A stretch of 63,713 bases of DNA, filler included, from Reticulomyxa filosa (taxonomy: Eukaryota > Protista > Foraminifera), in NCBI GenBank assembly GCA_000512085.1. It is 25 parts of 25 records of this genome, joined end to end, with 100 filler letters (N's around TTAATTAATTAA, not from the genome) between each part and the next. Parts side by side here need not be neighbours in the genome. Positions count along the whole stretch, not along the records: positions 33,670 to 38,783 come from ASPP01028050.1; 24 more parts are not named here. The stretch is one strand, 5' to 3'. Made by a program: the position numbers and the translations under genes. Below, one piece after another: positions 31,097 through 40,900 of the stretch (position 1 is the first letter of the stretch; every line of letters begins with the position of its first letter). The notes beneath the pieces were generated by a model, which was given only the letters and a program-made list of their open reading frames with translations, searched no databases and was not told the origin of the DNA.

Positions 31097-33731
31097 NNNN
31101 NNNNNNNNNNNNNNNNNNNNNNNNNNNNNNNNNNNNNNNNTTAATTAATTAANNNNNNNNNNNNNNNNNNNNNNNNNNNNNNNNNNNNNNNNNNNNTATT
31201 TTCTTTAAAAATCAACCTTTGTGAAAATATAGAACATTTTCTTTTCATTTCATTACTCAAAATAAGTTTGCCATGCGAAAGAGTATTAATGATATATGTT
31301 TGCATAACGATGACATGTATGAACAATTGTTTGCTTGCAATGTGATGTACATTTCAAATCCCTGTGTGCGCACATAAGGCGTATATATAGACAAATCTGT
31401 GACTTACCAAATTTTTCACAGTTTTGATACATTTGCAACTGTATTTTTCCAATAATTCTAGCACTTGAAGATGTCTTCATCGTTGGCAATCAACTGTATT
31501 AACATTACATCGTTTGTAGTGAATTTATTAAACCTATATTTGAGTTCAGAGATGTTATCGTGCGATTTTGGTTTACACTACTTTCAAAATTGATATCCTT
31601 CAAGTACAGACATGGACGTTTAAGTGTGTCAAATCAGAATATTGACTTGCGCCCAATGAAATGTTAACATATGTATGTATGAAATTGCCTTTATCCAAAT
31701 TATTATGTCAATAGGTTGTATATTGTATTCGAAGCATTTCTTATGATGTTGTCACATTTTTGTTATCAAATTTACATTGAGTTATGTCATATCTATTGTA
31801 TATGGCTTGGTTGCATTTATTCGTTTGATATTCAATACAAATACTCACGGTTTGATGTAATTAACATATTTTTGTGATGGTATCTATTCATCCAAACAAT
31901 TCGATCCATTTTTGGACATTCAAGTTACTCCAAACGTTGCATTCATTATCAATATCACTGGATTTCCATATGTTGTCATCTATAAAAGATGATACATAAC
32001 TCACATAATTTACCAAAGACCATATGTTATTTAGATTGTATAAACCCAATCTCCAATCATTGTTGTTGTTTCAAACGTACTTTGTTACATTCGATTGCAA
32101 TTTTATATTTCAATAGCTTGTCAACAATGCCATTATTATTTTACCAATAAACAAATTGTCATCCATATCAATGTATATAACATAGCCTAATATTACTGCT
32201 CACATTGCTATAACTCATTGTAGTCAAGCTTTGGATATACCTAACACATTTGCACATAACTTGATGAAACTCAACAATGGCACTCAGTACATACACGAAT
32301 TAAACACGCAAGTGCTGAAGAAAAATGACAGAGGTAATAACCAAATCCTAACGTGATGTTAAGAAACAGGGAATGACAAGACTGCAACTCGAAAAATATG
32401 CAAAAACCACGCATATTCTCCCTTTAATCCAAAAAAACCAAGAAAAAGTGGACAATATCATGCCGCAATTCCAAATTGAAACAATATGACAATTAAATGT
32501 GAATGGGCTTGAGTTGTTGTATAAAGCGATGATTGACCGAATGAAAGACTACTATGAGAAGCTAACAAAAAAAGTCCAGGATTTTGCAATAAAGCAGACA
32601 ACTACATTCCGGCTTGCACAACACCCAACAGCTATCACTACAAAAAAAACCACAGAAATTTTTGTTACTGGTTTTTTTTTTGAGGTGCCTTGTCATTAAA
32701 TTGGGGGAATGCTGCAAACACCACAACCCCTGACAAAACACAATCCAGACATCCATTCCTCGATGAAATATCACAGCAACGTTCAACAAATACAAGATAA
32801 ACTAATGTCGACAAACAAATATGACAACAACACTAAACATGCAAGAGGCAAATTCAATTCGTTGAACAAGAGAGATTTTGGCAGTCAACAGAGCAAACGG
32901 AATTACACGCGTCTAGAGGCCCCGAAATACGTAGAACGTACATACGTTCCGGTAACAGAAAAAATGAAGAAAGCCAATGCATAATGTCAAAACTTGAATT
33001 CGAAGTGGTAGAACGGCAAGAATTAATTTGGGAACTAATGATCCAAGACACATGCAAGCACAAGATAGCAAAGACAATGACAACTTGCTAACCGGTAGCA
33101 GTACGTTATCCAAATACGATTGTCCACAAAGTACGCTAAATTTATTTGTTGAAATGATTATTTTTTTGGTTTCACCACCTTTTTTTTCCAGTAAATGTTC
33201 TTTTTTCTTCTAGGAAGACTTTTTTTCTTCCAGATGGAATTTTTTTTATTTAATCTCCACTGTATATGATATTGTGTTGAAATGTATTAAAAAAATTAGT
33301 TTTTTTCCAAATTGATATATAGTCATTGAATTCATACTCAGATACGTATAGATTACTACATTTTATTTTTTTAAAATTCTTTTGTCCCCTTATGAGGAAA
33401 TAATTTCAAAAAGAAAAAGTAATATCTGTCCAATATAAATTTCTTGCATTTCAATCATCTTGCTTTTTTGACAATTGCTTACTTGAAATCAATATGCAAT
33501 CATAACATCCTTTTTGTTGCTGCAACAAATATTGTTAATTCTTTTGAGTGATCATTTTTTTATCACCGANNNNNNNNNNNNNNNNNNNNNNNNNNNNNNN
33601 NNNNNNNNNNNNNTTAATTAATTAANNNNNNNNNNNNNNNNNNNNNNNNNNNNNNNNNNNNNNNNNNNNAAAAAAAAAAAAAAAAAAAGATAATCATATT
33701 GCAAAAAAATAAAATAAAATAAACAAACTAG

Positions 33732-34471
33732 GGTACCTCAAATTGGTGATTTGTGGTCACAGCATCGGAGGTAGCTTTGCAACTTTAATGGGCTTGGAGC
33801 TTTTGGCTCATCAATTCAATCATCCGTTTGAAATATACACCTTTGGGAGTCCATTGGTATTGGAGGCGGATGTAGGCGACACAACCGAGATCGGTAATGC
33901 AATTCCATGAACTTATAACTGTGTGAAAAAAAGAAAATAAAATAATAATAATGTTGTAATACTATATGATGATTGTTATTGTTATTGTTATATGAAACAT
34001 AGGCAAAGCATTGGCCAAACGTATAAAGAATTTTGTGTACCAATTTGACATTGTCCCACGAATCCAAAGAGGCTGGTCGAAAAATGCAAACTTGCTTTGG
34101 ATTTGCGGACGCTTGAAGTGGAATGTGACAGAGATTGAACAGCTGTGTGTGAACAGCTTCGGTCCGATTGGCGAGTATTTCCTACTGTTTGATTACTTTG
34201 TCCCTCCAATGGTGTTGAAGAAGAAGAAAACGTTTGTGCGATGTCTGGAAGGACGATGCATTCAACTATTGAAATTGGACCACTTGTTCGAGTTAGTACC
34301 CTATTATCGAGGCACCAATGCCAATCAAGTCATGGACGACCACTCCATGCTTCGCTATCTGAGCAAACTCTTGTTCTTGGACACACTCCAACTCGAACGA
34401 AGTGATCGATGGAATGCCACACGTGTCGTCATTGCCAACCAGAAACAAGCCCTGGAGTCCTCCACTTCTAT

Positions 34472-34502
<31 letters not shown>

Positions 34503-35085
34503 GCTGCTGCTATTACTGCTGCTGATGTCTCTGCTTGTGCCAAAGATGTCTCTGCTGTTCCTGTTCCTGTCCGACCTTTGATCCCGCCTCCTGTTCCTCC
34601 CGAAATCTTGGCCAAAATCAAACAACGACAAGAACAAATCGAAAAGGAAACTTCCAAAGACAAAGACAAAGATATCGACTGCAAACCCTCTGTCTCGTCC
34701 CAATCTCTCCCTCCTCTTCCTCCTCCACCTCCGTCTTTGCCATCGACTAATGCCATCTCTAATTCGAGTGGTAGTCAACTTGTCGACCAAAAGACACCCT
34801 CTGCGTCCAGGCGAAATATGACTTCGTTGTTGTCTGCTATTCGAGAAGTTTGGTCTTTTTTTAACAAGGTGCTTTTTACACTTTTATATATATGAATTGT
34901 GTAATGTACATATATGTATTCAGAAACCTGCACTCAAACCGGTTAGCGCGGAAGAAAAACCCCCCACACAAGCGCAAGACGATCTCTCCCAAAATGTCAT
35001 GAGTGCCATCACCAAGAGACGGTACTTGATGATGGAATCTGACAGTAGTGAAGATGAAACCAACTGGGATTCGGAGGAAGATTGA
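33732..35085 (+). CDS. Class-3 lipase domain fused to poly-proline and a WH2-Central-Acidic (VCA) tail; 5' truncated, 3 exons visible
   Basis: Exons 33732-33893, 34003-34847 and 34924-35085 with GT-AG introns and consistent phases. Lipase motifs: LVICGHSIGG, YTFGSP, NFVYQFDIVPRI, DDHSMLRY. Tail: PPPVPP, LPPLPPPPPSLP, SLLSAIRE|KPALKPV, LSQNVMSAITKRRYLM, ESDSSEDETNWDSEED*. Confidence 0.85.
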
Positions 35086-35579
35086 ATTACTTTTTTATTT
35101 TTTTATTTTTTTTTAGTAAGTGTTCCTTTGCAATGTTTGCAATCATTTTCTTAGTTTTTAATTTCAAAAAAAAAAAAAACCACTTTCCAATCCAATCACA
35201 CGCGCAAATTACTTGTGTCTTGCTGTTAAATTCTCCACAAAACAGTGCTAGCTTCCAAGAAAAAAACAGCCTATAAACTCACAACTTACAGACAGAAACC
35301 TGCCACCTTCTAGTTTCAAAGACTAGATACAAACTAAAAAAAAAAAAAAATTCTATATCAACGATGCCAACGTGACAAAAAGTAACAATATTCCGTGATT
35401 ATCCAATTAGCTAAATTAAAAGATTTAAGGTTTCTCTGAAACAGCATTAATTAACGCAACAGCCGAAAACTAGTGCACGTTAGTAAATCTCAGTCATTAA
35501 TGGTCAAGGAAAAATAATTTAAAGGAAAAAGGGAAATATAAAATTATTTAAATTAAAAGCAGAATCACAATAGGAAACA

Positions 35580-37900
35580 TGTCTTCCTTATTGGAAAACA
35601 CAGGAAAAACAGAATTGAAAACACAACTTAAAAATAATAATGCCTCATCACCATCAAACATGCAAAATAGAACAATACACAACAAAAATAACAATTTGAA
35701 ATTACCATATATACAAAGAAAACAAAATAAAAGACAGAGACAGATATAAAGTGAAGATGAAGAAAGTATATTTCAAAGATATTCAACCAAAGGAATTGGA
35801 AGCAATCGCTGAAAATTTTAACAGATTTCACAAACAAGAAATCGACAATAGGAAAAACGCAAATGATAGAAAAGATCTATTAATTTTTCCCAGATGCATG
35901 ATATACAACCAAATGTACGCAATTAAAGAAAAGAAAAAAATAGAAGAATCAGTCCATAATCCTGAAATAAATATGTTCTTCTCAAAAACGTAGATAAAGC
36001 AGAAACAGAAGGGTCAATTAAGGATAGCATCGAACAGTAAGGCTACAATGTTAAAAAAATCGAAAGATTCAAACAAATCATATTATCAAAATATTAATGG
36101 AAAGTGCCGAAGATGTTACTAAAATTAAAGGATATGGAAATATGTATTGGATACATACACATACAGACATAAATATAAGATAATAATAGACGACGACATA
36201 GACGACATTTCTGACAATGCAAAAAATGTTTTTGCTTGAATCACATCCAAGAAAACTTTAACAAAAAACAAGTTTGCAAATACTGTGTAAAATAAAACCA
36301 TAAATCGGAAAATTGCAGATTTAAGAAAAACACTAAAAAATACAGATGCGTACTTTGCAAATGACAACATCGAATCGACTCATTAATGTGTCCAAAAATG
36401 CAGCAAGTACATGAACAAATAGGATTCAAATACACAATACATGAACAAAAATAATTGAAAAACAACAATACAAAATTGAAAATAAGGAAAAAATGAATGG
36501 ACAAGGAAAAATCTATAAAAATAAAATACAAAATGAAACTCAAAAGTAACTACTTTAATGCAAGAAACAACTAAACAAAATAGAAAAACATATCAATTCC
36601 AGCAAATTCAGCACAAAAAATAAACATTTTGCAAAAAACAAAAGATAACAAACAAAATGAAGAAATTAAAGAACTTCGCGAACAATTGTTCATTCTACGA
36701 GATACAGTCAATAATCTGACTAAACTAGTTGAAGCATTAATTCATAGCAATGGAATGCCAAAAGGTTCACAAATAAGTAACTTAGAGAATATGTATTTTC
36801 AGAAAGCCAAAACCACTTTAAATAATTTAGCACAATGACCCAACTACAAATATTCCAAAATAACATAAATGGATTCTACTCCAAAGTACAACTACTAGAA
36901 CAGAAGTTACACTCCAAACGACAACATGTTTGTCTGTTGCAATAATGTTTTCGTTCAGCAAAGAATAGCACAAATCACAACTTTCATATAGAAATAAGCA
37001 AAAAACAAAAAGTTACTCTCCATTCGGAGAAAGACAAATGAAAACGCTAACGATTCATTCTGATTGGACGAATTCTAAAAAGAACTTCAATTAGCAACAA
37101 AAACACAAAAAACATTATAATCGGAGGTGATTGGAACGCAAACTATCTGGCATGGATAGACCAAAAAACAGACGAAATTGGAGAAGCTATATTAAAGTTT
37201 ATAGTGTCAAATAACATGCACATACTAAACAGTTTTCCATTTAACTACACCTTTTTAAAGGACGAAGCAGTAGAATAGTTCAAATCTTCTGTTGAAGAAA
37301 TGGAGAAAGAGGCAGAAATTGACATTGATATATGGACTGAAGAACGGCATCAAACTGACATTACTGAAGGAGAAATTACCGATGCAATAAGAAGAATATC
37401 ATCATACAAAGCACAATGCACTGATAGCATTCACAATATAATACTGAAGAATGTAGGAATGCAATGGTTGAGTCATTAGCACATTTATTTAATTGGAGTT
37501 ACCGGATTGTATACGTTCCCATAAAGTGGAAAATTGCAAACATAGTCACTATTCCAAAACCATAGAAAGAACATACTATTTGCAAAAATTATAAACCTAT
37601 ATCTTTGCTATCGTTAGGAAAGGTACTTGATCGCATAGTGACAATGATGTTAATTGGATACCTTAATGAACACCAATTACTACATTATAGCCAAGCAGGA
37701 TTTCAATACTGGCACAATACATCGGAATTATTGCTACGAATATTGGAAACCATACATGCATACATGGACAAAAATACAGTCAAGTACGCTGTTATGTTGG
37801 GTATATCAGCTGCATACGATAGTGTCAGGCGAAATGGACTACGTTTCAAAATGAAAACACAATTTAATATCAAAGGACTAATAACGTGAAAAGTTATGTT
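35580..37900 (+). mobile_element. Degenerate non-LTR retrotransposon (ORF1-like region plus APE endonuclease and RT remnants)
   Basis: APE: LQIFQNNING (36844) and IIGGDWNA (about 37120). RT: WKIANIVTIPKP, YKPISLLS, SQAGFQ, AVMLGISAAYDSV (LDISKAFDSV-like). Many stops. The upstream boundary is approximate. Confidence 0.8.
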
Positions 37901-40900
37901 GAATCAATAACTGCATATCATCAAAAAAGTGGAGTCTGTGGAACATTTTTTGATGAAATGTTCATACTATGAACCCATTAGGAAAACCTGGTATTCAAAT
38001 GTCAAGATTTTGGTACCAGAATTACACGAAAGAAACTTAAAATTGAGTCTGTGAAATTCGTAGTAGCGTCAAAAAGAAATATATAACGTCAAATAACGAA
38101 ATGGAAAGCAACATATACAAATACACAGAGCTATGTAATTGAGAAAATAGTTGATTTGTTGCGATTGTTTCTTATTATATTTAATAGTGCTATATCCATG
38201 GATCAGGGCACTCTAACTTGCTTGTTATACGCAATTTGGTGAAAGAGAGAATATCCCTAAATTTTTTGTGAAAAAGTTGGTGACGGCAAGAAAAAGATTA
38301 TTATCATTTTCACACGTTGAACAAATCGTTGAGAGAGTTTCAAATATTCTAATAAGCCACGATGAGTGATGAATCCGGTCCAGATATGAATGAAGAGTAT
38401 GTTCCCGAAGACGGAGGAGAAGCGGAAGAGGTAGGCTGTTCCGGGCTCCTTCTTTGAGGAACTCCCTGAAGTATTGTGAGGAGAAGACCTACAAATGTGT
38501 ATGTGAATGGTTTGGCAAAAACCTTTTGCAAGAGTCCTTGCGAAGAAGAGGAAGAATACAAGCCGAAAAGACGCAGAAGCAGTAGAACAAAAAAAGCGAA
38601 GAAAACATCCAAGAAAGGGCCGACAGAAAGCGATAATGGTAAGTTTGAGACGTGTCATGTAATTTCCAAGAATTTTCAAACAAGCAAACAAAAAAAAAAA
38701 AAAGCACTCACACATTTTTGCATTTTGAGAGAGCAGAAAATGAAAGAGAAGAGAGATGGTGTATGTGTGTGTGTGTGTGGTGGNNNNNNNNNNNNNNNNN
38801 NNNNNNNNNNNNNNNNNNNNNNNNNNNTTAATTAATTAANNNNNNNNNNNNNNNNNNNNNNNNNNNNNNNNNNNNNNNNNNNNACTTGGTTGGGTTATGT
38901 GATGTTTAGTCTTGGAGTACTGTAATGAGGGATGAACAGACAATTACGAAGTTATAAAAGGATATAAGTATTGATATCAAAATTAAAATGTATAAAAAAT
39001 TGAAATGGCCAAACCAATTTGGGACGATAGTACAATATATTGCAAACATATTTGTGAAATTCATGTGAAAAAAGCTCGGTGTGGTAAAAAGTTAGACCAC
39101 AATCAGTTTTAGAGACAATTTTCTTGAGTTGAATCATTATTGCGACAATGTTAAGATAAAATAATTGACGAAATATATAGTTTAACTGTATTTATGTATA
39201 ATGATTGTAAAAAAAATTTGTTACTGTTAAAGCTTTAAGATATAATCAAATAATTTATACGAACGACTTATATGTGTATGTATTGAAGCAAAGTTCTTTA
39301 AAATTTTTTTATCACAACAGTATTAAATCGATTTAGTTGAATCAAACTTAAAATTATTATTTTTGTTCGCTTGTATGAAGATTGATATTTGTATTTACTT
39401 GCTTGAATGAATCGTTATGTTGTCCAATTTGAGATTATTGTTGTATCAATTTTCATTAATTCTAAGATTTATTCAATATATTTTTTTATTCAGTTGTAAT
39501 ATAACTATTGAAATAACTAATCTTTCGTTATTTGAATCATTATTACATATACTTCAAGTTGTTTCTTATGTTATATATTGTTTTTTCATGAAAAAAATGA
39601 TTATTTTTATAAAGTGTGATTTTAGTGTCAAACGTATAAAATAATATTTGAATATGTATTATACAAAATTTCAAATATGCAAAATATGTGCTTGATTTTA
39701 TTTTCTTTTTTTCATATAAATTAATTACAATTATACAATTTGTAGTTATAGCAATTTGTGTTATAAAATAAAATTCAGGATCCAGGTATTATATTATTTA
39801 TCGAATCCTTAAAATCAATTTTTTTTATATAATATAATTAAATTTTTCTTTATTATTTGCAAAACTAAATTTGAACATTTAAGAATATATTATTTTTGAA
39901 ATATATTGTAAATCATATTTAGTGTTACAATTATTTGCAAATTGTTTGAATTTGTGATAATTAGTATTATATTATGAAAAGCATTTGCCACAATTAATGC
40001 AATTTGCATTTTCTTTATATAGATAAGTGAATCTTTACATTGTTTGTTTGATATTAAATTCTTTTTTCATTAAGTTTTAGAATACTTAATTTCACTTTTA
40101 TAATAAAAAAAGAAACTATGTATATATTATCGGAACCTCAGTTTTTTTCGATAGTGAAATCTATTAACAGAAAAGTGTCTTTAAGGATCTGCATACAACT
40201 TGTTATGATGACTTATGATTTTGACAATTAAAATTTCAAATTATTTATACAACAAATATTTAGCTTGAAACACAGTCAAATAATATGCATTCTGATATAG
40301 CAATAGACTAATATTGCGCATTAGGTCGAGTTGATATTGATACAAAAGTCATTGAACGTTAAATTAATCAAAAAATTTTGAATACAACAAGATGTAATTA
40401 ATCAAACAGTCAAGTTTTTGACTATATATTCAAATGGAAAAAAAAGTACAAATTGCAGATTATATACTATACATATACACACTTTTCAAATATCAAAACG
40501 TTATCATTTTATCAAAGGAGAAGAAACTAAATTTGCACCATTATATCATCGTGCAAAGACATTTACAAAAAAATTTGTGTTTTAATATTATTTCAAATTA
40601 TTACTGTCTTGGTTTCTTTTGAAAATAGTAATGTGTTTTTCTATTTATAAATCGATGTCTTGTTCAATAAATCCCATAAGATTATTGACAGTAACGTCAG
40701 CTTTTAAAAATATTTTTGCTGTTTCTTACTATTTTCGGATATCATGTTGTCTGATATACATTTTCATATTTGTACTGTCATCTTTAACTTTGCTTTTACT
40801 TGTTCGATTTATATTTCTTTTAATAGTATTTATGGCCTATTTGTTTATTTTTTTTGTTAAAAAAAATAATAAAGTTGATTTTCGGNNNNNNNNNNNNNNN

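What the first reader, a model, noticed from the sequence alone, without database searches (positions are those of the whole stretch)
33732..35085. Class-3 lipase fused to a WASP/WAVE-type poly-Pro-VCA tail: candidate lipase-coupled Arp2/3 activator
Seen: three exons within one contig splice in frame through GT-AG introns (33894-34002, 34848-34923). The ORF track misses the first exon and splits the rest. The product has the lipase_3 nucleophile GHSIGG (33755-33772), YTFGSP, DIVPR and DHSM..Y, so a full Ser-Asp-His triad appears present. Two poly-proline tracts follow, then a WH2 assembled across the second intron (SLLSAIRE|KPALKPV), an amphipathic Central helix ending in KRR (LSQNVMSAITKRRYLM) and an acidic terminus with Trp (ESDSSEDETNWDSEED*). 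Established: poly-Pro + WH2 + C + A(W) at the extreme C-terminus is the Arp2/3-activating module of class I nucleation-promoting factors (WASP, WAVE/SCAR, WASH, WHAMM, JMY), whose N-termini are regulatory or targeting domains rather than lipases. Inference: this protein may couple membrane-lipid hydrolysis or sensing to branched-actin nucleation, plausibly in a pseudopodial protist. I know of no described Lipase_3-VCA architecture.
Basis: partly seen in the sequence, partly recalled or inferred. Interest (0 to 1): 0.92.

Follow-up and report, generated by a model that had tools for sequence, protein, structure and literature searches.

The report
Lipase-domain protein with WASP-type actin tail
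A gene fragment of the foraminifer Reticulomyxa filosa joins a class-3 lipase domain to a C-terminal proline-rich, WH2, central and acidic-Trp tail like that of WASP/WAVE Arp2/3 activators; I found this combination described nowhere, and its activity is untested.

Summary
The piece (33670-38783) is a whole 5,114-bp Reticulomyxa filosa contig.

- **Lipase:** exon 1 passes Pfam Lipase_3 (42 bits, cut-off 22).
- **One exon:** exon 2 is a single ORF holding DIVPR, DDHSM..Y, both proline tracts and the WH2 helix.
- **Second intron:** an intron-less homologue (L001, JGI contig) is colinear across both junctions and has the WH2 uninterrupted. Exons are 46-48% GC and introns 21-25%. pN is far below a saturated pS in every segment.
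- **Tail homology:** L001's tail matches, at E=3.4e-5 against 1.84 billion proteins, a 4xWH2-C-A protein. That protein passes Pfam WH2 and aligns with N-WASP VCA at 6.5e-7. The window tail fits the published WH2, C and A patterns.

Caveats:
- No RNA data were available.
- The N-terminus lies off the contig.
- Only two family members were found.
- L001 lacks the nucleophile Ser, the Trp and the stop codon, and has two frameshifts.
- Pfam WH2 does not score L001's tail.

Verdict: a real, apparently undescribed Lipase_3-VCA architecture. This is a new variant of WASP-family nucleation-promoting factors, with function still inferred.

The parts
33670..33731 (+). A/T-rich 3' end of an upstream intron, ending in AG at 33730-33731. 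It is cut by the contig edge, so the 5' exons (N-terminal part of the lipase domain and anything before it) are missing.
   Evidence: GC 0.11. The translation upstream of 33732 does not align with homologue L001, while the residues from Gly-Tyr onward do.
33732..33893 (+). Exon 1: the nucleophile elbow of a class-3 lipase domain (GHSIGG 33755-33772, YTFGSP 33836-33853).
   Evidence: Pfam Lipase_3 42.1 bits against a cut-off of 22, E=1e-10. 81% identical to L001/P0002.
33894..34002 (+). Intron 1 (109 nt, GTAATG...ATAG), splitting a Gly codon.
   Evidence: It is used by the deposited model RFI_31891. It is absent from the colinear homologue L001. GC 0.21.
34003..34847 (+). Exon 2, one continuous ORF. 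It holds, in order: the rest of the lipase domain (Asp in DIVPR 34047-34061, His in DDHSMLRY 34335-34358); a poly-Thr/Ala linker (34473-34502); proline tract 1 (34557-34601); the conserved block EILAKIKQRQEQIEKE (34602-34649); proline tract 2 (34707-34742); and the WH2 helix LLSAIR (34827-34844).
   Evidence: Aligned with P0002 at 68% identity and with the L001 tail at 46% identity. pN 0.18-0.39 against pS 0.74-0.86.
34848..34923 (+). Intron 2 (76 nt, GTTTGG...TCAG, phase 0). The deposited gene model does not remove it.
   Evidence: GC 0.25 against 0.46-0.48 in the flanking exons. In L001 the end of exon 2 aligns to nt 1297 and the start of exon 3 to nt 1298, with no gap. Read-through stops after 16 codons that have no counterpart in L001.
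34924..35085 (+). Exon 3: the second half of the WH2 (LKPV 34933-34944), the central (C) motif LSQNVMSAITKRRY (34984-35025), the acidic region (35035-35082) with Trp 35065-35067, and the stop codon 35083-35085.
   Evidence: 52% identical to L001 with pN 0.27 against pS 0.78. Profiles that include it hit only N-WASP/WAVE1 in PDB. The C motif aligns with that of the WH2 protein P0003.

Best explanation
The piece carries the 3' part of a Reticulomyxa filosa gene. Its product is a class-3 (alpha/beta-hydrolase) lipase domain followed by:
- a low-complexity linker;
- two proline-rich tracts;
- one WH2 actin-monomer-binding motif;
- a WASP-type central amphipathic helix ending in KRR-Tyr;
- an acidic C-terminus with a penultimate-region Trp.

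This is a PRD-V-C-A module homologous to that of WASP-family class I nucleation-promoting factors.

Shown: the architecture, the splice model by homology and composition, purifying selection on the tail, and sequence homology of the tail to real VCA modules.

Inferred:
- The tail delivers an actin monomer (WH2) and binds and activates Arp2/3 complex (C + acidic Trp). The proline tracts would recruit profilin-actin or SH3 proteins.
- The lipase-like domain takes the place of the subfamily-specific N-terminal targeting or regulatory domain. It would place branched-actin nucleation on a lipid surface (membrane or lipid droplet).

Whether the lipase domain hydrolyses lipid or only binds it is open. 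The deposited model RFI_31891 misses the last intron and so hides the tail.
For: Identity and gene model:
- The piece is the whole 5,114-bp R. filosa contig of RFI_31891.
- Lipase_3: exon 1 scores 42 bits and homologue P0002 49 bits, both above the cut-off of 22. 29 of 30 atlas neighbours are Lipase_3 clusters. The nearest solved structures are the EDS1 lipase-like domain and fungal lipases.
- The lipase half, both proline tracts and the WH2 helix sit in one uninterrupted ORF.

Second locus and splice model:
- The intron-less homologue L001 has the same domain order. It is colinear across both junctions and has the WH2 uninterrupted.
- pS is about 0.8 (saturated) against pN of 0.09-0.39 in all four segments.
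- GC steps sharply at the junctions.

Tail homology:
- L001's tail matches P0003 at E=3.4e-5 over WH2-C-A in an exhaustive 1.84-billion-protein search, and at 2e-10 pairwise.
- P0003 passes Pfam WH2 (43.8 bits, cut-off 23.1). It aligns with N-WASP V-C-A in the Arp2/3 complex structure 6uhc at 6.5e-7.
- A profile of L001, P0003 and window exon 3 hits only N-WASP and WAVE1 in the whole PDB, aligned across V, C and A.
- A profile of only L001 and exon 3 still ranks N-WASP tandem WH2 first, at E=0.0035.
- The window matches the published WASP-family patterns of PMC3298513: WH2 at 9 of 10 specified positions with a 4-residue linker, the C motif completely, and the acidic region with Trp.

Target present: Foraminifera express all seven Arp2/3 subunits (PMC5455982).
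Against: - No transcript evidence for the 34847/34924 junction was available. No RNA run holds the stretch, and the one contig laid starts at 34957.
- Pfam WH2 gave no hit, even at E<=10, on L001's uninterrupted WH2. Exon 3 alone hits nothing in PDB or Pfam.
- The third position of LKKV is Pro, although P0003's genuine WH2 repeats also carry LKPV.
- The only homologue has Gly for the nucleophile Ser and Leu for the Trp. It has no stop codon and two frameshifts at A-runs.
- Only two family members exist in the collections searched.
- The N-terminal part of the protein is unknown.
Confidence: 0.6

Rival explanations
1. The architecture is real, but the tail acts only as an actin-monomer or actin-filament binding module (WH2 plus a helical segment) and does not activate Arp2/3. 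The lipase-like domain would then be an actin-tethered enzyme or scaffold.
For: - In L001 the acidic-region Trp is Leu.
- Independent significance against solved structures rests on the WH2 part only.
- Many WH2 proteins do not act through Arp2/3 (established knowledge).
Against: - The C motif fits the WASP-family rule exactly: three hydrophobic residues spaced by three, then KRR, then Tyr.
- It is the best conserved part of the tail.
- It aligns with the C motifs of P0003, N-WASP and WAVE1.
- The window copy and the 97%-identical contig from run X1 keep the Trp and the stop codon.
- Some accepted WASP-family members also lack the Trp (PMC3298513).
Confidence: 0.22
2. The deposited model is right and intron 2 is not removed. 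Exon 3 would then be a relic of a former tail, or the locus would be a decaying copy, and the protein would be a lipase with a proline-rich end only.
For: - RFI_31891 as deposited reads through the intron.
- There is no RNA evidence either way.
- L001, the only relative, shows lesions typical of decay.
Against: - Exon 3 has exon-like GC and the intron has intron-like GC.
- L001 is colinear with no gap at the junction and has no counterpart of the read-through peptide.
- pN of 0.27 against pS of 0.78 in exon 3.
- Run X1's contig differs from exon 3 by 3 synonymous changes and 1 conservative change.
- A half WH2 at an exon end would be meaningless without its LKPV partner, which sits 4 residues into exon 3.
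Confidence: 0.1
3. An assembly chimera, or two adjacent genes read as one.
For: The R. filosa assembly is highly fragmented, and this contig is only 5.1 kb.
Against: - The lipase Asp and His motifs and the proline-rich and WH2 parts share one ORF without a stop.
- An independent contig from another sample has the same order.
Confidence: 0.03

Closest known systems
WASP-family class I nucleation-promoting factors (WASP/N-WASP, SCAR/WAVE, WASH, WHAMM/JMY, WAWH, WAML, WHIMP)
   Same: - A proline-rich region followed by WH2, a central amphipathic helix with a basic doublet or triplet, and an acidic end with Trp at the extreme C-terminus.
- The spacing of the C motif is identical to that of WAVE1.
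- Profile hits in PDB are exclusively N-WASP and WAVE1.
- WAML (IMD-VCA in Entamoeba) is a precedent for a membrane-interacting domain fused to VCA (PMC3298513).
   Different: - None of the subfamily-defining N-terminal domains (WH1/GBD, SHD, WAHD1, IMD and others) is seen. A Lipase_3 domain, an enzyme fold, precedes the tail.
- The WH2 has LKPV in place of LKKV.
- Sequence similarity is detectable only through an intermediate (P0003) or a profile.
Class-3 lipases (Pfam PF01764): fungal triacylglycerol lipases, plant PLA1/DAD1-type enzymes, and the non-catalytic lipase-like domains of EDS1/PAD4
   Same: - GxSxG elbow (GHSIGG), a TFGSP strand, Asp in DIVPR, and His followed by x3-Tyr.
- Pfam score above the cut-off.
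- The best solved matches are EDS1 and the Fusarium and Thermomyces lipases.
   Different: - The solved matches are weak (E about 1e-3).
- The segment between Asp and His is about 95 residues long.
- No known member carries a VCA tail.
- In homologue L001 the Ser is Gly, as in pseudo-lipases.
P0003, an unnamed 246-aa partial protein from JGI sample 3300019051 (4 WH2 repeats, then C, then an acidic SDWDD end)
   Same: - It is the closest relative of the tail: E=3.4e-5 library-wide and 2e-10 pairwise.
- It shares the LKPV variant, the RR(K)-Tyr/Phe-Leu-Met C end and the Ser/Asp-rich acidic region.
   Different: - It has four WH2 repeats instead of one.
- No lipase domain lies in the part that is known, and the protein is truncated at its N-terminus.

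Membership tests
Pfam Lipase_3 (PF01764) | Profile score above the curated gathering threshold | tested here: met
   Exon 1 alone scores 42.1 bits against 22. Homologue P0002 scores 49.1 bits. Exon 2 alone gives no hit, because the profile ends near DIVPR.
Pfam Lipase_3 (PF01764) | Ser-Asp-His triad (GxSxG nucleophile, Asp after strand beta-7, His near the end) | tested here: inconclusive
   All three motifs are present in the window: GHSIGG, DIVPR and DDHSMLRY. They align with the EDS1 and fungal lipase motifs through P0002. No structure was modelled. The homologue has GHGVGG.
Pfam Lipase_3 (PF01764) | Complete alpha/beta-hydrolase core, including the N-terminal strands and the oxyanion-hole region | not testable with these tools
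   The 5' exons lie off the contig. The corresponding 86 aa of L001 gave no Pfam hit.
WASP-family VCA module (class I NPF) | Proline-rich region N-terminal of the WH2 | tested here: met
   Two tracts, at 34557-34601 and 34707-34742. Both are conserved in position in L001.
WASP-family VCA module (class I NPF) | [quoted passage not shown] | tested here: inconclusive
   9 of 10 specified positions fit, with a 4-residue linker; Pro replaces the second basic residue. A profile of L001 and exon 3 ranks N-WASP tandem WH2 first in PDB, at E=0.0035. Pfam WH2 gave no hit on L001's uninterrupted motif. The window motif spans the intron and was not searched in joined form.
WASP-family VCA module (class I NPF) | C motif: three large hydrophobic residues spaced by three, a K/R doublet or triplet, and a terminal hydrophobic residue (PMC3298513) | tested here: met
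   LSQNVMSAITKRRY at 34984-35025. The same motif is in L001 and P0003. It aligns with the C regions of N-WASP and WAVE1.
WASP-family VCA module (class I NPF) | Acidic C-terminus with Trp (or another aromatic residue) near the end | tested here: met
   9 of the last 16 residues are acidic and none is basic. Trp is sixth from the end and the stop follows. L001 does not meet this feature: it has Leu and no stop.
WASP-family VCA module (class I NPF) | Statistically supported sequence homology to an accepted VCA | tested here: met
   L001's tail matches P0003 at E=3.4e-5. P0003 passes Pfam WH2 and matches N-WASP VCA at 6.5e-7. The link is transitive, not direct for the window sequence. Exon 3 against P0003 is only E=0.007 pairwise.
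WASP-family VCA module (class I NPF) | Binds G-actin and activates Arp2/3 complex | not testable with these tools
Existing WASP subfamilies (WASP, WAVE, WASH, WHAMM/JMY, WAWH, WAML) | Subfamily-specific N-terminal domain (WH1/GBD, SHD, WAHD1, IMD and others) | tested here: not met
   The only domain detected upstream of the tail is Lipase_3. The extreme N-terminus is unknown.

The most novel reading that the evidence does not exclude
The lipase domain is catalytically active and directly gates the tail. For example, the amphipathic C helix or the Trp could be held on the lipase lid or cleft and released on interfacial activation at a lipid surface. Lipid hydrolysis or binding would then switch on Arp2/3-dependent branched actin assembly in the reticulopodia of a foraminifer. 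This would be an enzyme-gated nucleation-promoting factor with no GTPase input.
Probability: 0.12. Interest if true: 0.88.

Novelty: new variant of a known kind. Interest (0 to 1): 0.64.

Why it matters
WASP-family proteins are classified by what sits in front of the shared proline-rich-VCA module. Each new N-terminal domain has revealed a new place or signal for branched-actin assembly, as WASH did for endosomes and WHAMM for the ER-Golgi and autophagosomes. An alpha/beta-hydrolase lipase domain in that position would be the first enzyme-type head that I could find described. It would point to lipid surfaces as a nucleation site in foraminifera, whose actin regulation is almost unstudied. It also shows that the deposited R. 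filosa gene model hides the tail. Similar fusions may therefore be missed in fragmented protist genomes.

Tried and rejected
Searches that gave nothing useful:
- Exon 3 alone against Pfam and PDB gave no hits.
- Pfam on L001's tail gave no WH2 hit. This is recorded as a failed membership feature, not explained away.
- The public-run search found no RNA holder. The one run laid (X1) gave only a 222-bp contig over 34957-35171, which does not reach the junction.
- Two scans of JGI metagenome contigs, with lipase and tail patterns, found no relatives.
- Three word-index protein searches returned only RFI_31891, P0002 and P0003 itself. These searches have length limits, so longer full-length relatives could be missed.
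- The conserved block PPPVPxEILAKIKxxQEQIEKE found nothing significant in PDB.
- Rfam and tRNA scans of the piece were empty.
- Literature searches for lipase with WH2, NPF or VCA, and for Reticulomyxa with WASP, WH2 or SCAR, found no description.

Hits set aside as chance or bias:
- P0004 (1,375 aa, repetitive, E=7.8e-4) is taken as a compositional or repeat hit.
- The weak EB1 CH-domain hits to P0002 114-173 (E about 0.07) are taken as chance.

Alignment problem: MAFFT placed the 21-aa exon-2 end on the C helix instead of the WH2 helix. That row was dropped from the profiles.

Steps not done:
- No complex prediction was run, because no actin or Arp2/3 sequence could be obtained by reference.

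Full report
**What the piece is.** The only genomic sequence in the window is 33670-38783 (5,114 bases). A protein search with exon 2 returned a 100%-identical entry, 'hypothetical protein RFI_31891 [Reticulomyxa filosa]' (P0001, 332 aa). It comes from a contig of exactly 5,114 bases.

**Check of the observation.** I translated the three proposed exons separately and mapped every motif. All lie at the stated places.
- Exon 1 (33732-33893) holds GHSIGG (33755-33772) and YTFGSP.
- Intron 1 (33894-34002) is GT...AG and splits a Gly codon.
- Exon 2 (34003-34847) is one uninterrupted ORF. It contains DIVPR, DDHSMLRY, a poly-Thr/Ala linker encoded by an ACT microsatellite, proline tract 1, a charged helical block, proline tract 2, and LLSAIR followed by Glu at the exon end.
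- Intron 2 (34848-34923) is GT...AG in phase 0.
- Exon 3 (34924-35085) starts K-P-A-LKPV. It continues to LSQNVMSAITKRRY and ends in a 16-residue stretch with 9 acidic residues, no basic residue, Trp sixth from the end, and a stop.
- Upstream of 33732 the sequence is 11% GC and ends in AG. This is the tail of a further intron cut by the contig edge, so the N-terminal part of the protein is missing.

Everything was done exon by exon.

**Is the splice model right?** There is no RNA evidence. No public RNA run holds the stretch. The one run that could be laid gave a 222-bp contig over 34957-35171 that does not reach the junction. Three indirect lines support the model.
1. Composition steps sharply at each proposed junction: exons are 0.46-0.48 GC, introns 0.21-0.25, and flanks 0.11-0.29.
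2. The deposited model itself uses intron 1. It reads through intron 2 and ends after 16 further residues.
3. A homologous contig gives the strongest support.
   - L001 (JGI sample 3300030741, 1,543 bases) has no intron at either position and is colinear with the window. Exon 1 aligns to L001 nt 313-471, exon 2 from 475, exon 2 ends at 1297 and exon 3 begins at 1298.
   - In L001 the WH2 is uninterrupted (…TSLLSEIREKRNLKPV…).
   - L001 has no counterpart of the read-through peptide of RFI_31891.
   - Synonymous sites between the two loci are saturated (pS 0.74-0.86). Non-synonymous differences are few: pN is 0.09 in exon 1, 0.18 in the lipase half of exon 2, 0.39 in the tail half of exon 2, and 0.27 in exon 3. 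The tail, exon 3 included, has therefore been under purifying selection over a long divergence.

The near-identical contig in run X1 adds a little. It differs from exon 3 by three synonymous changes and one Ser-to-Asn change, and it keeps the Trp codon and the stop.

**The lipase part.**
- Exon 1 alone passes Pfam Lipase_3 (42.1 bits, cut-off 22). The homologue P0002 scores 49.1 bits.
- 29 of 30 language-model neighbours of P0002 are Lipase_3 clusters.
- The nearest solved structures are weak but consistent: the EDS1 lipase-like domain at about 1e-3, the Fusarium and Thermomyces lipases, and plant PLA1.
- Ser, Asp and His motifs are all present in the window.
- The N-terminal strands and the oxyanion region cannot be checked, because they lie off the contig.

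**The tail.**
- An exhaustive HMMER search of 1.84 billion representative proteins with L001's uninterrupted tail found only three proteins below E=0.001.
  - The first is RFI_31891.
  - The second is P0003, at E=3.4e-5 over query residues 94-167, which is WH2 through the acidic end.
  - The third is a repetitive 1,375-aa protein, which I discount.
- P0003 (246 aa, a partial protein from JGI sample 3300019051) has four WH2 repeats, a C motif and an ...SDWDD end. It passes Pfam WH2 (43.8 bits against 23.1). It aligns with N-WASP, including the chain in the Arp2/3-bound structure 6uhc, across V, C and A at 6.5e-7.
- Pairwise, L001 WH2-C against P0003 gives 2e-10. Window exon 3 against P0003 gives 0.007 over the C motif.
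- A profile of L001, P0003 and exon 3 hits six PDB sequences at E<=10. All are N-WASP or WAVE1, and the long alignments span V-C-A.
- P0003 could carry that result by itself, so I repeated the search with only L001 and exon 3. N-WASP tandem WH2 is still the top hit at E=0.0035, but nothing else is significant.
- Measured against the WASP-family patterns published from 1,080 WH2 and about 900 C domains (PMC3298513):
  - The window WH2 matches 9 of 10 specified positions with the standard 4-residue linker. Pro replaces the second Lys of LKKV, as it does in P0003's genuine repeats.
  - The C rule is met completely: three hydrophobic residues spaced by three, a basic triplet, then Tyr. The spacing is that of WAVE1.
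  - The acidic-Trp end is met.
- In composition-preserving shuffles each feature is rare (1.6e-4 to 5.7e-3). None of 200,000 shuffles had the three exon-3 features together.
- A language-model search with exon 3 also placed WH2-containing clusters among its neighbours. I treat this as a lead only.
- Against membership, Pfam WH2 did not report L001's motif even at E<=10, and exon 3 alone finds nothing in Pfam or PDB.

**One gene or two.** One ORF (exon 2) carries the lipase Asp and His motifs, the proline tracts and the WH2 helix. L001 repeats the same order. A chimera or two adjacent genes is therefore very unlikely.

**What weakens the functional reading.** L001 is the only other member found. 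It differs at exactly the critical residues.
- The nucleophile Ser is Gly (GHGVGG).
- The tail Trp is Leu (TGG to TTG).
- The stop is Leu (TGA to TTA).
- There are two one-base frameshifts in A-runs.

With one low-coverage contig I cannot tell which explanation holds: a decaying paralogue, assembly errors, or a genuinely non-catalytic variant without Trp. The published survey notes accepted WASP-family members with Phe, or with no hydrophobic residue, in the A region. Loss of Trp is therefore not disqualifying. Still, conservation of Ser and Trp within the family is not shown.

**Mechanism proposed.** By homology, the WH2 would bind an actin monomer. The C helix and the acidic-Trp end would engage Arp2/3 complex. 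The proline tracts would feed profilin-actin or bind SH3 proteins. All seven Arp2/3 subunits are expressed in Foraminifera (PMC5455982). The lipase-like domain occupies the position of the subfamily-specific head. The most economical reading is that it targets nucleation to a lipid surface. Whether it hydrolyses lipid, or gates the tail, is inference only. The best conserved unassigned element is PPPVPxEILAKIKxxQEQIEKE, which matched nothing known.

**Comparison and novelty.** The module is the PRD-VCA of class I nucleation-promoting factors. The head is none of WH1/GBD, SHD, WAHD1 or IMD. The closest conceptual precedent is WAML (IMD-VCA) in Entamoeba. Full-text searches found no paper combining lipase with WH2, NPF or VCA, and none on WASP-family proteins in Reticulomyxa. 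The protein collections hold no other such architecture. I rate it a new variant of a known kind.

**The rest of the contig.** It is AT-rich. It carries a decayed reverse-transcriptase fragment and no RNA genes.

**Verdict.**
- Observation: confirmed.
- Architecture and homology: well supported (about 0.85).
- Arp2/3 activation: plausible but untested, with overall confidence of 0.6 for the full explanation.
- Coupling to lipid hydrolysis: speculative.

Noticed in passing
window 33670-35085 against P0001: The deposited gene model RFI_31891 starts at an internal Met (MGLELL...), downstream of the GHSIGG nucleophile. It also reads through intron 2. It therefore lacks both the catalytic Ser and the WH2-C-A tail, and carries no precomputed Pfam domain.
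   Followed up: yes
L001 331-351, 246-251, 885-892, 1439-1456: The homologue has Gly for the nucleophile Ser, two one-base frameshifts in A-runs, Leu for the tail Trp (TGG to TTG) and Leu for the stop (TGA to TTA). Even so, pN is far below pS. It may be decay, assembly error or a real variant; this is undecided.
   Followed up: partly
window 34584-34649 (L001 about 1046-1120): The block PPPVPxEILAKIKxxQEQIEKE is nearly identical in both loci, and is more conserved than the linkers around it. It matches no known motif in PDB.
   Followed up: partly
window 34464-34524: An ACT/GCT trinucleotide microsatellite encodes the poly-Thr/Ala linker between the lipase domain and the tail. It is absent from L001.
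   Followed up: no
window 37605-37886 (+), with neighbouring short ORFs 37300-38054: A reverse-transcriptase fragment (Pfam RVT_1, 25 bits, below the cut-off of 29.6, E=1.8e-5), broken into short ORFs. It looks like a decayed retroelement remnant downstream of the gene.
   Followed up: partly
window 34957-35171 (run X1, record 1): A 222-bp contig in a 2023 public run is about 97% identical. In exon 3 it has three synonymous changes and one Ser-to-Asn change (35003). It also has one base missing at 35136 in the 3' UTR. It may be a second strain, allele or paralogue.
   Followed up: partly
L002/L003 3-743 (P0003): An orphan partial protein with four WH2 repeats (LKPA, LKPV and LKHV variants), a C motif and an SDWDD end. 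It comes from JGI sample 3300019051, has no close relatives in the word-index search, and is the nearest known relative of the tail.
   Followed up: partly
window 36408-36472: An imperfect 30-bp tandem repeat (2.1 copies) in the AT-rich intergenic region.
   Followed up: no
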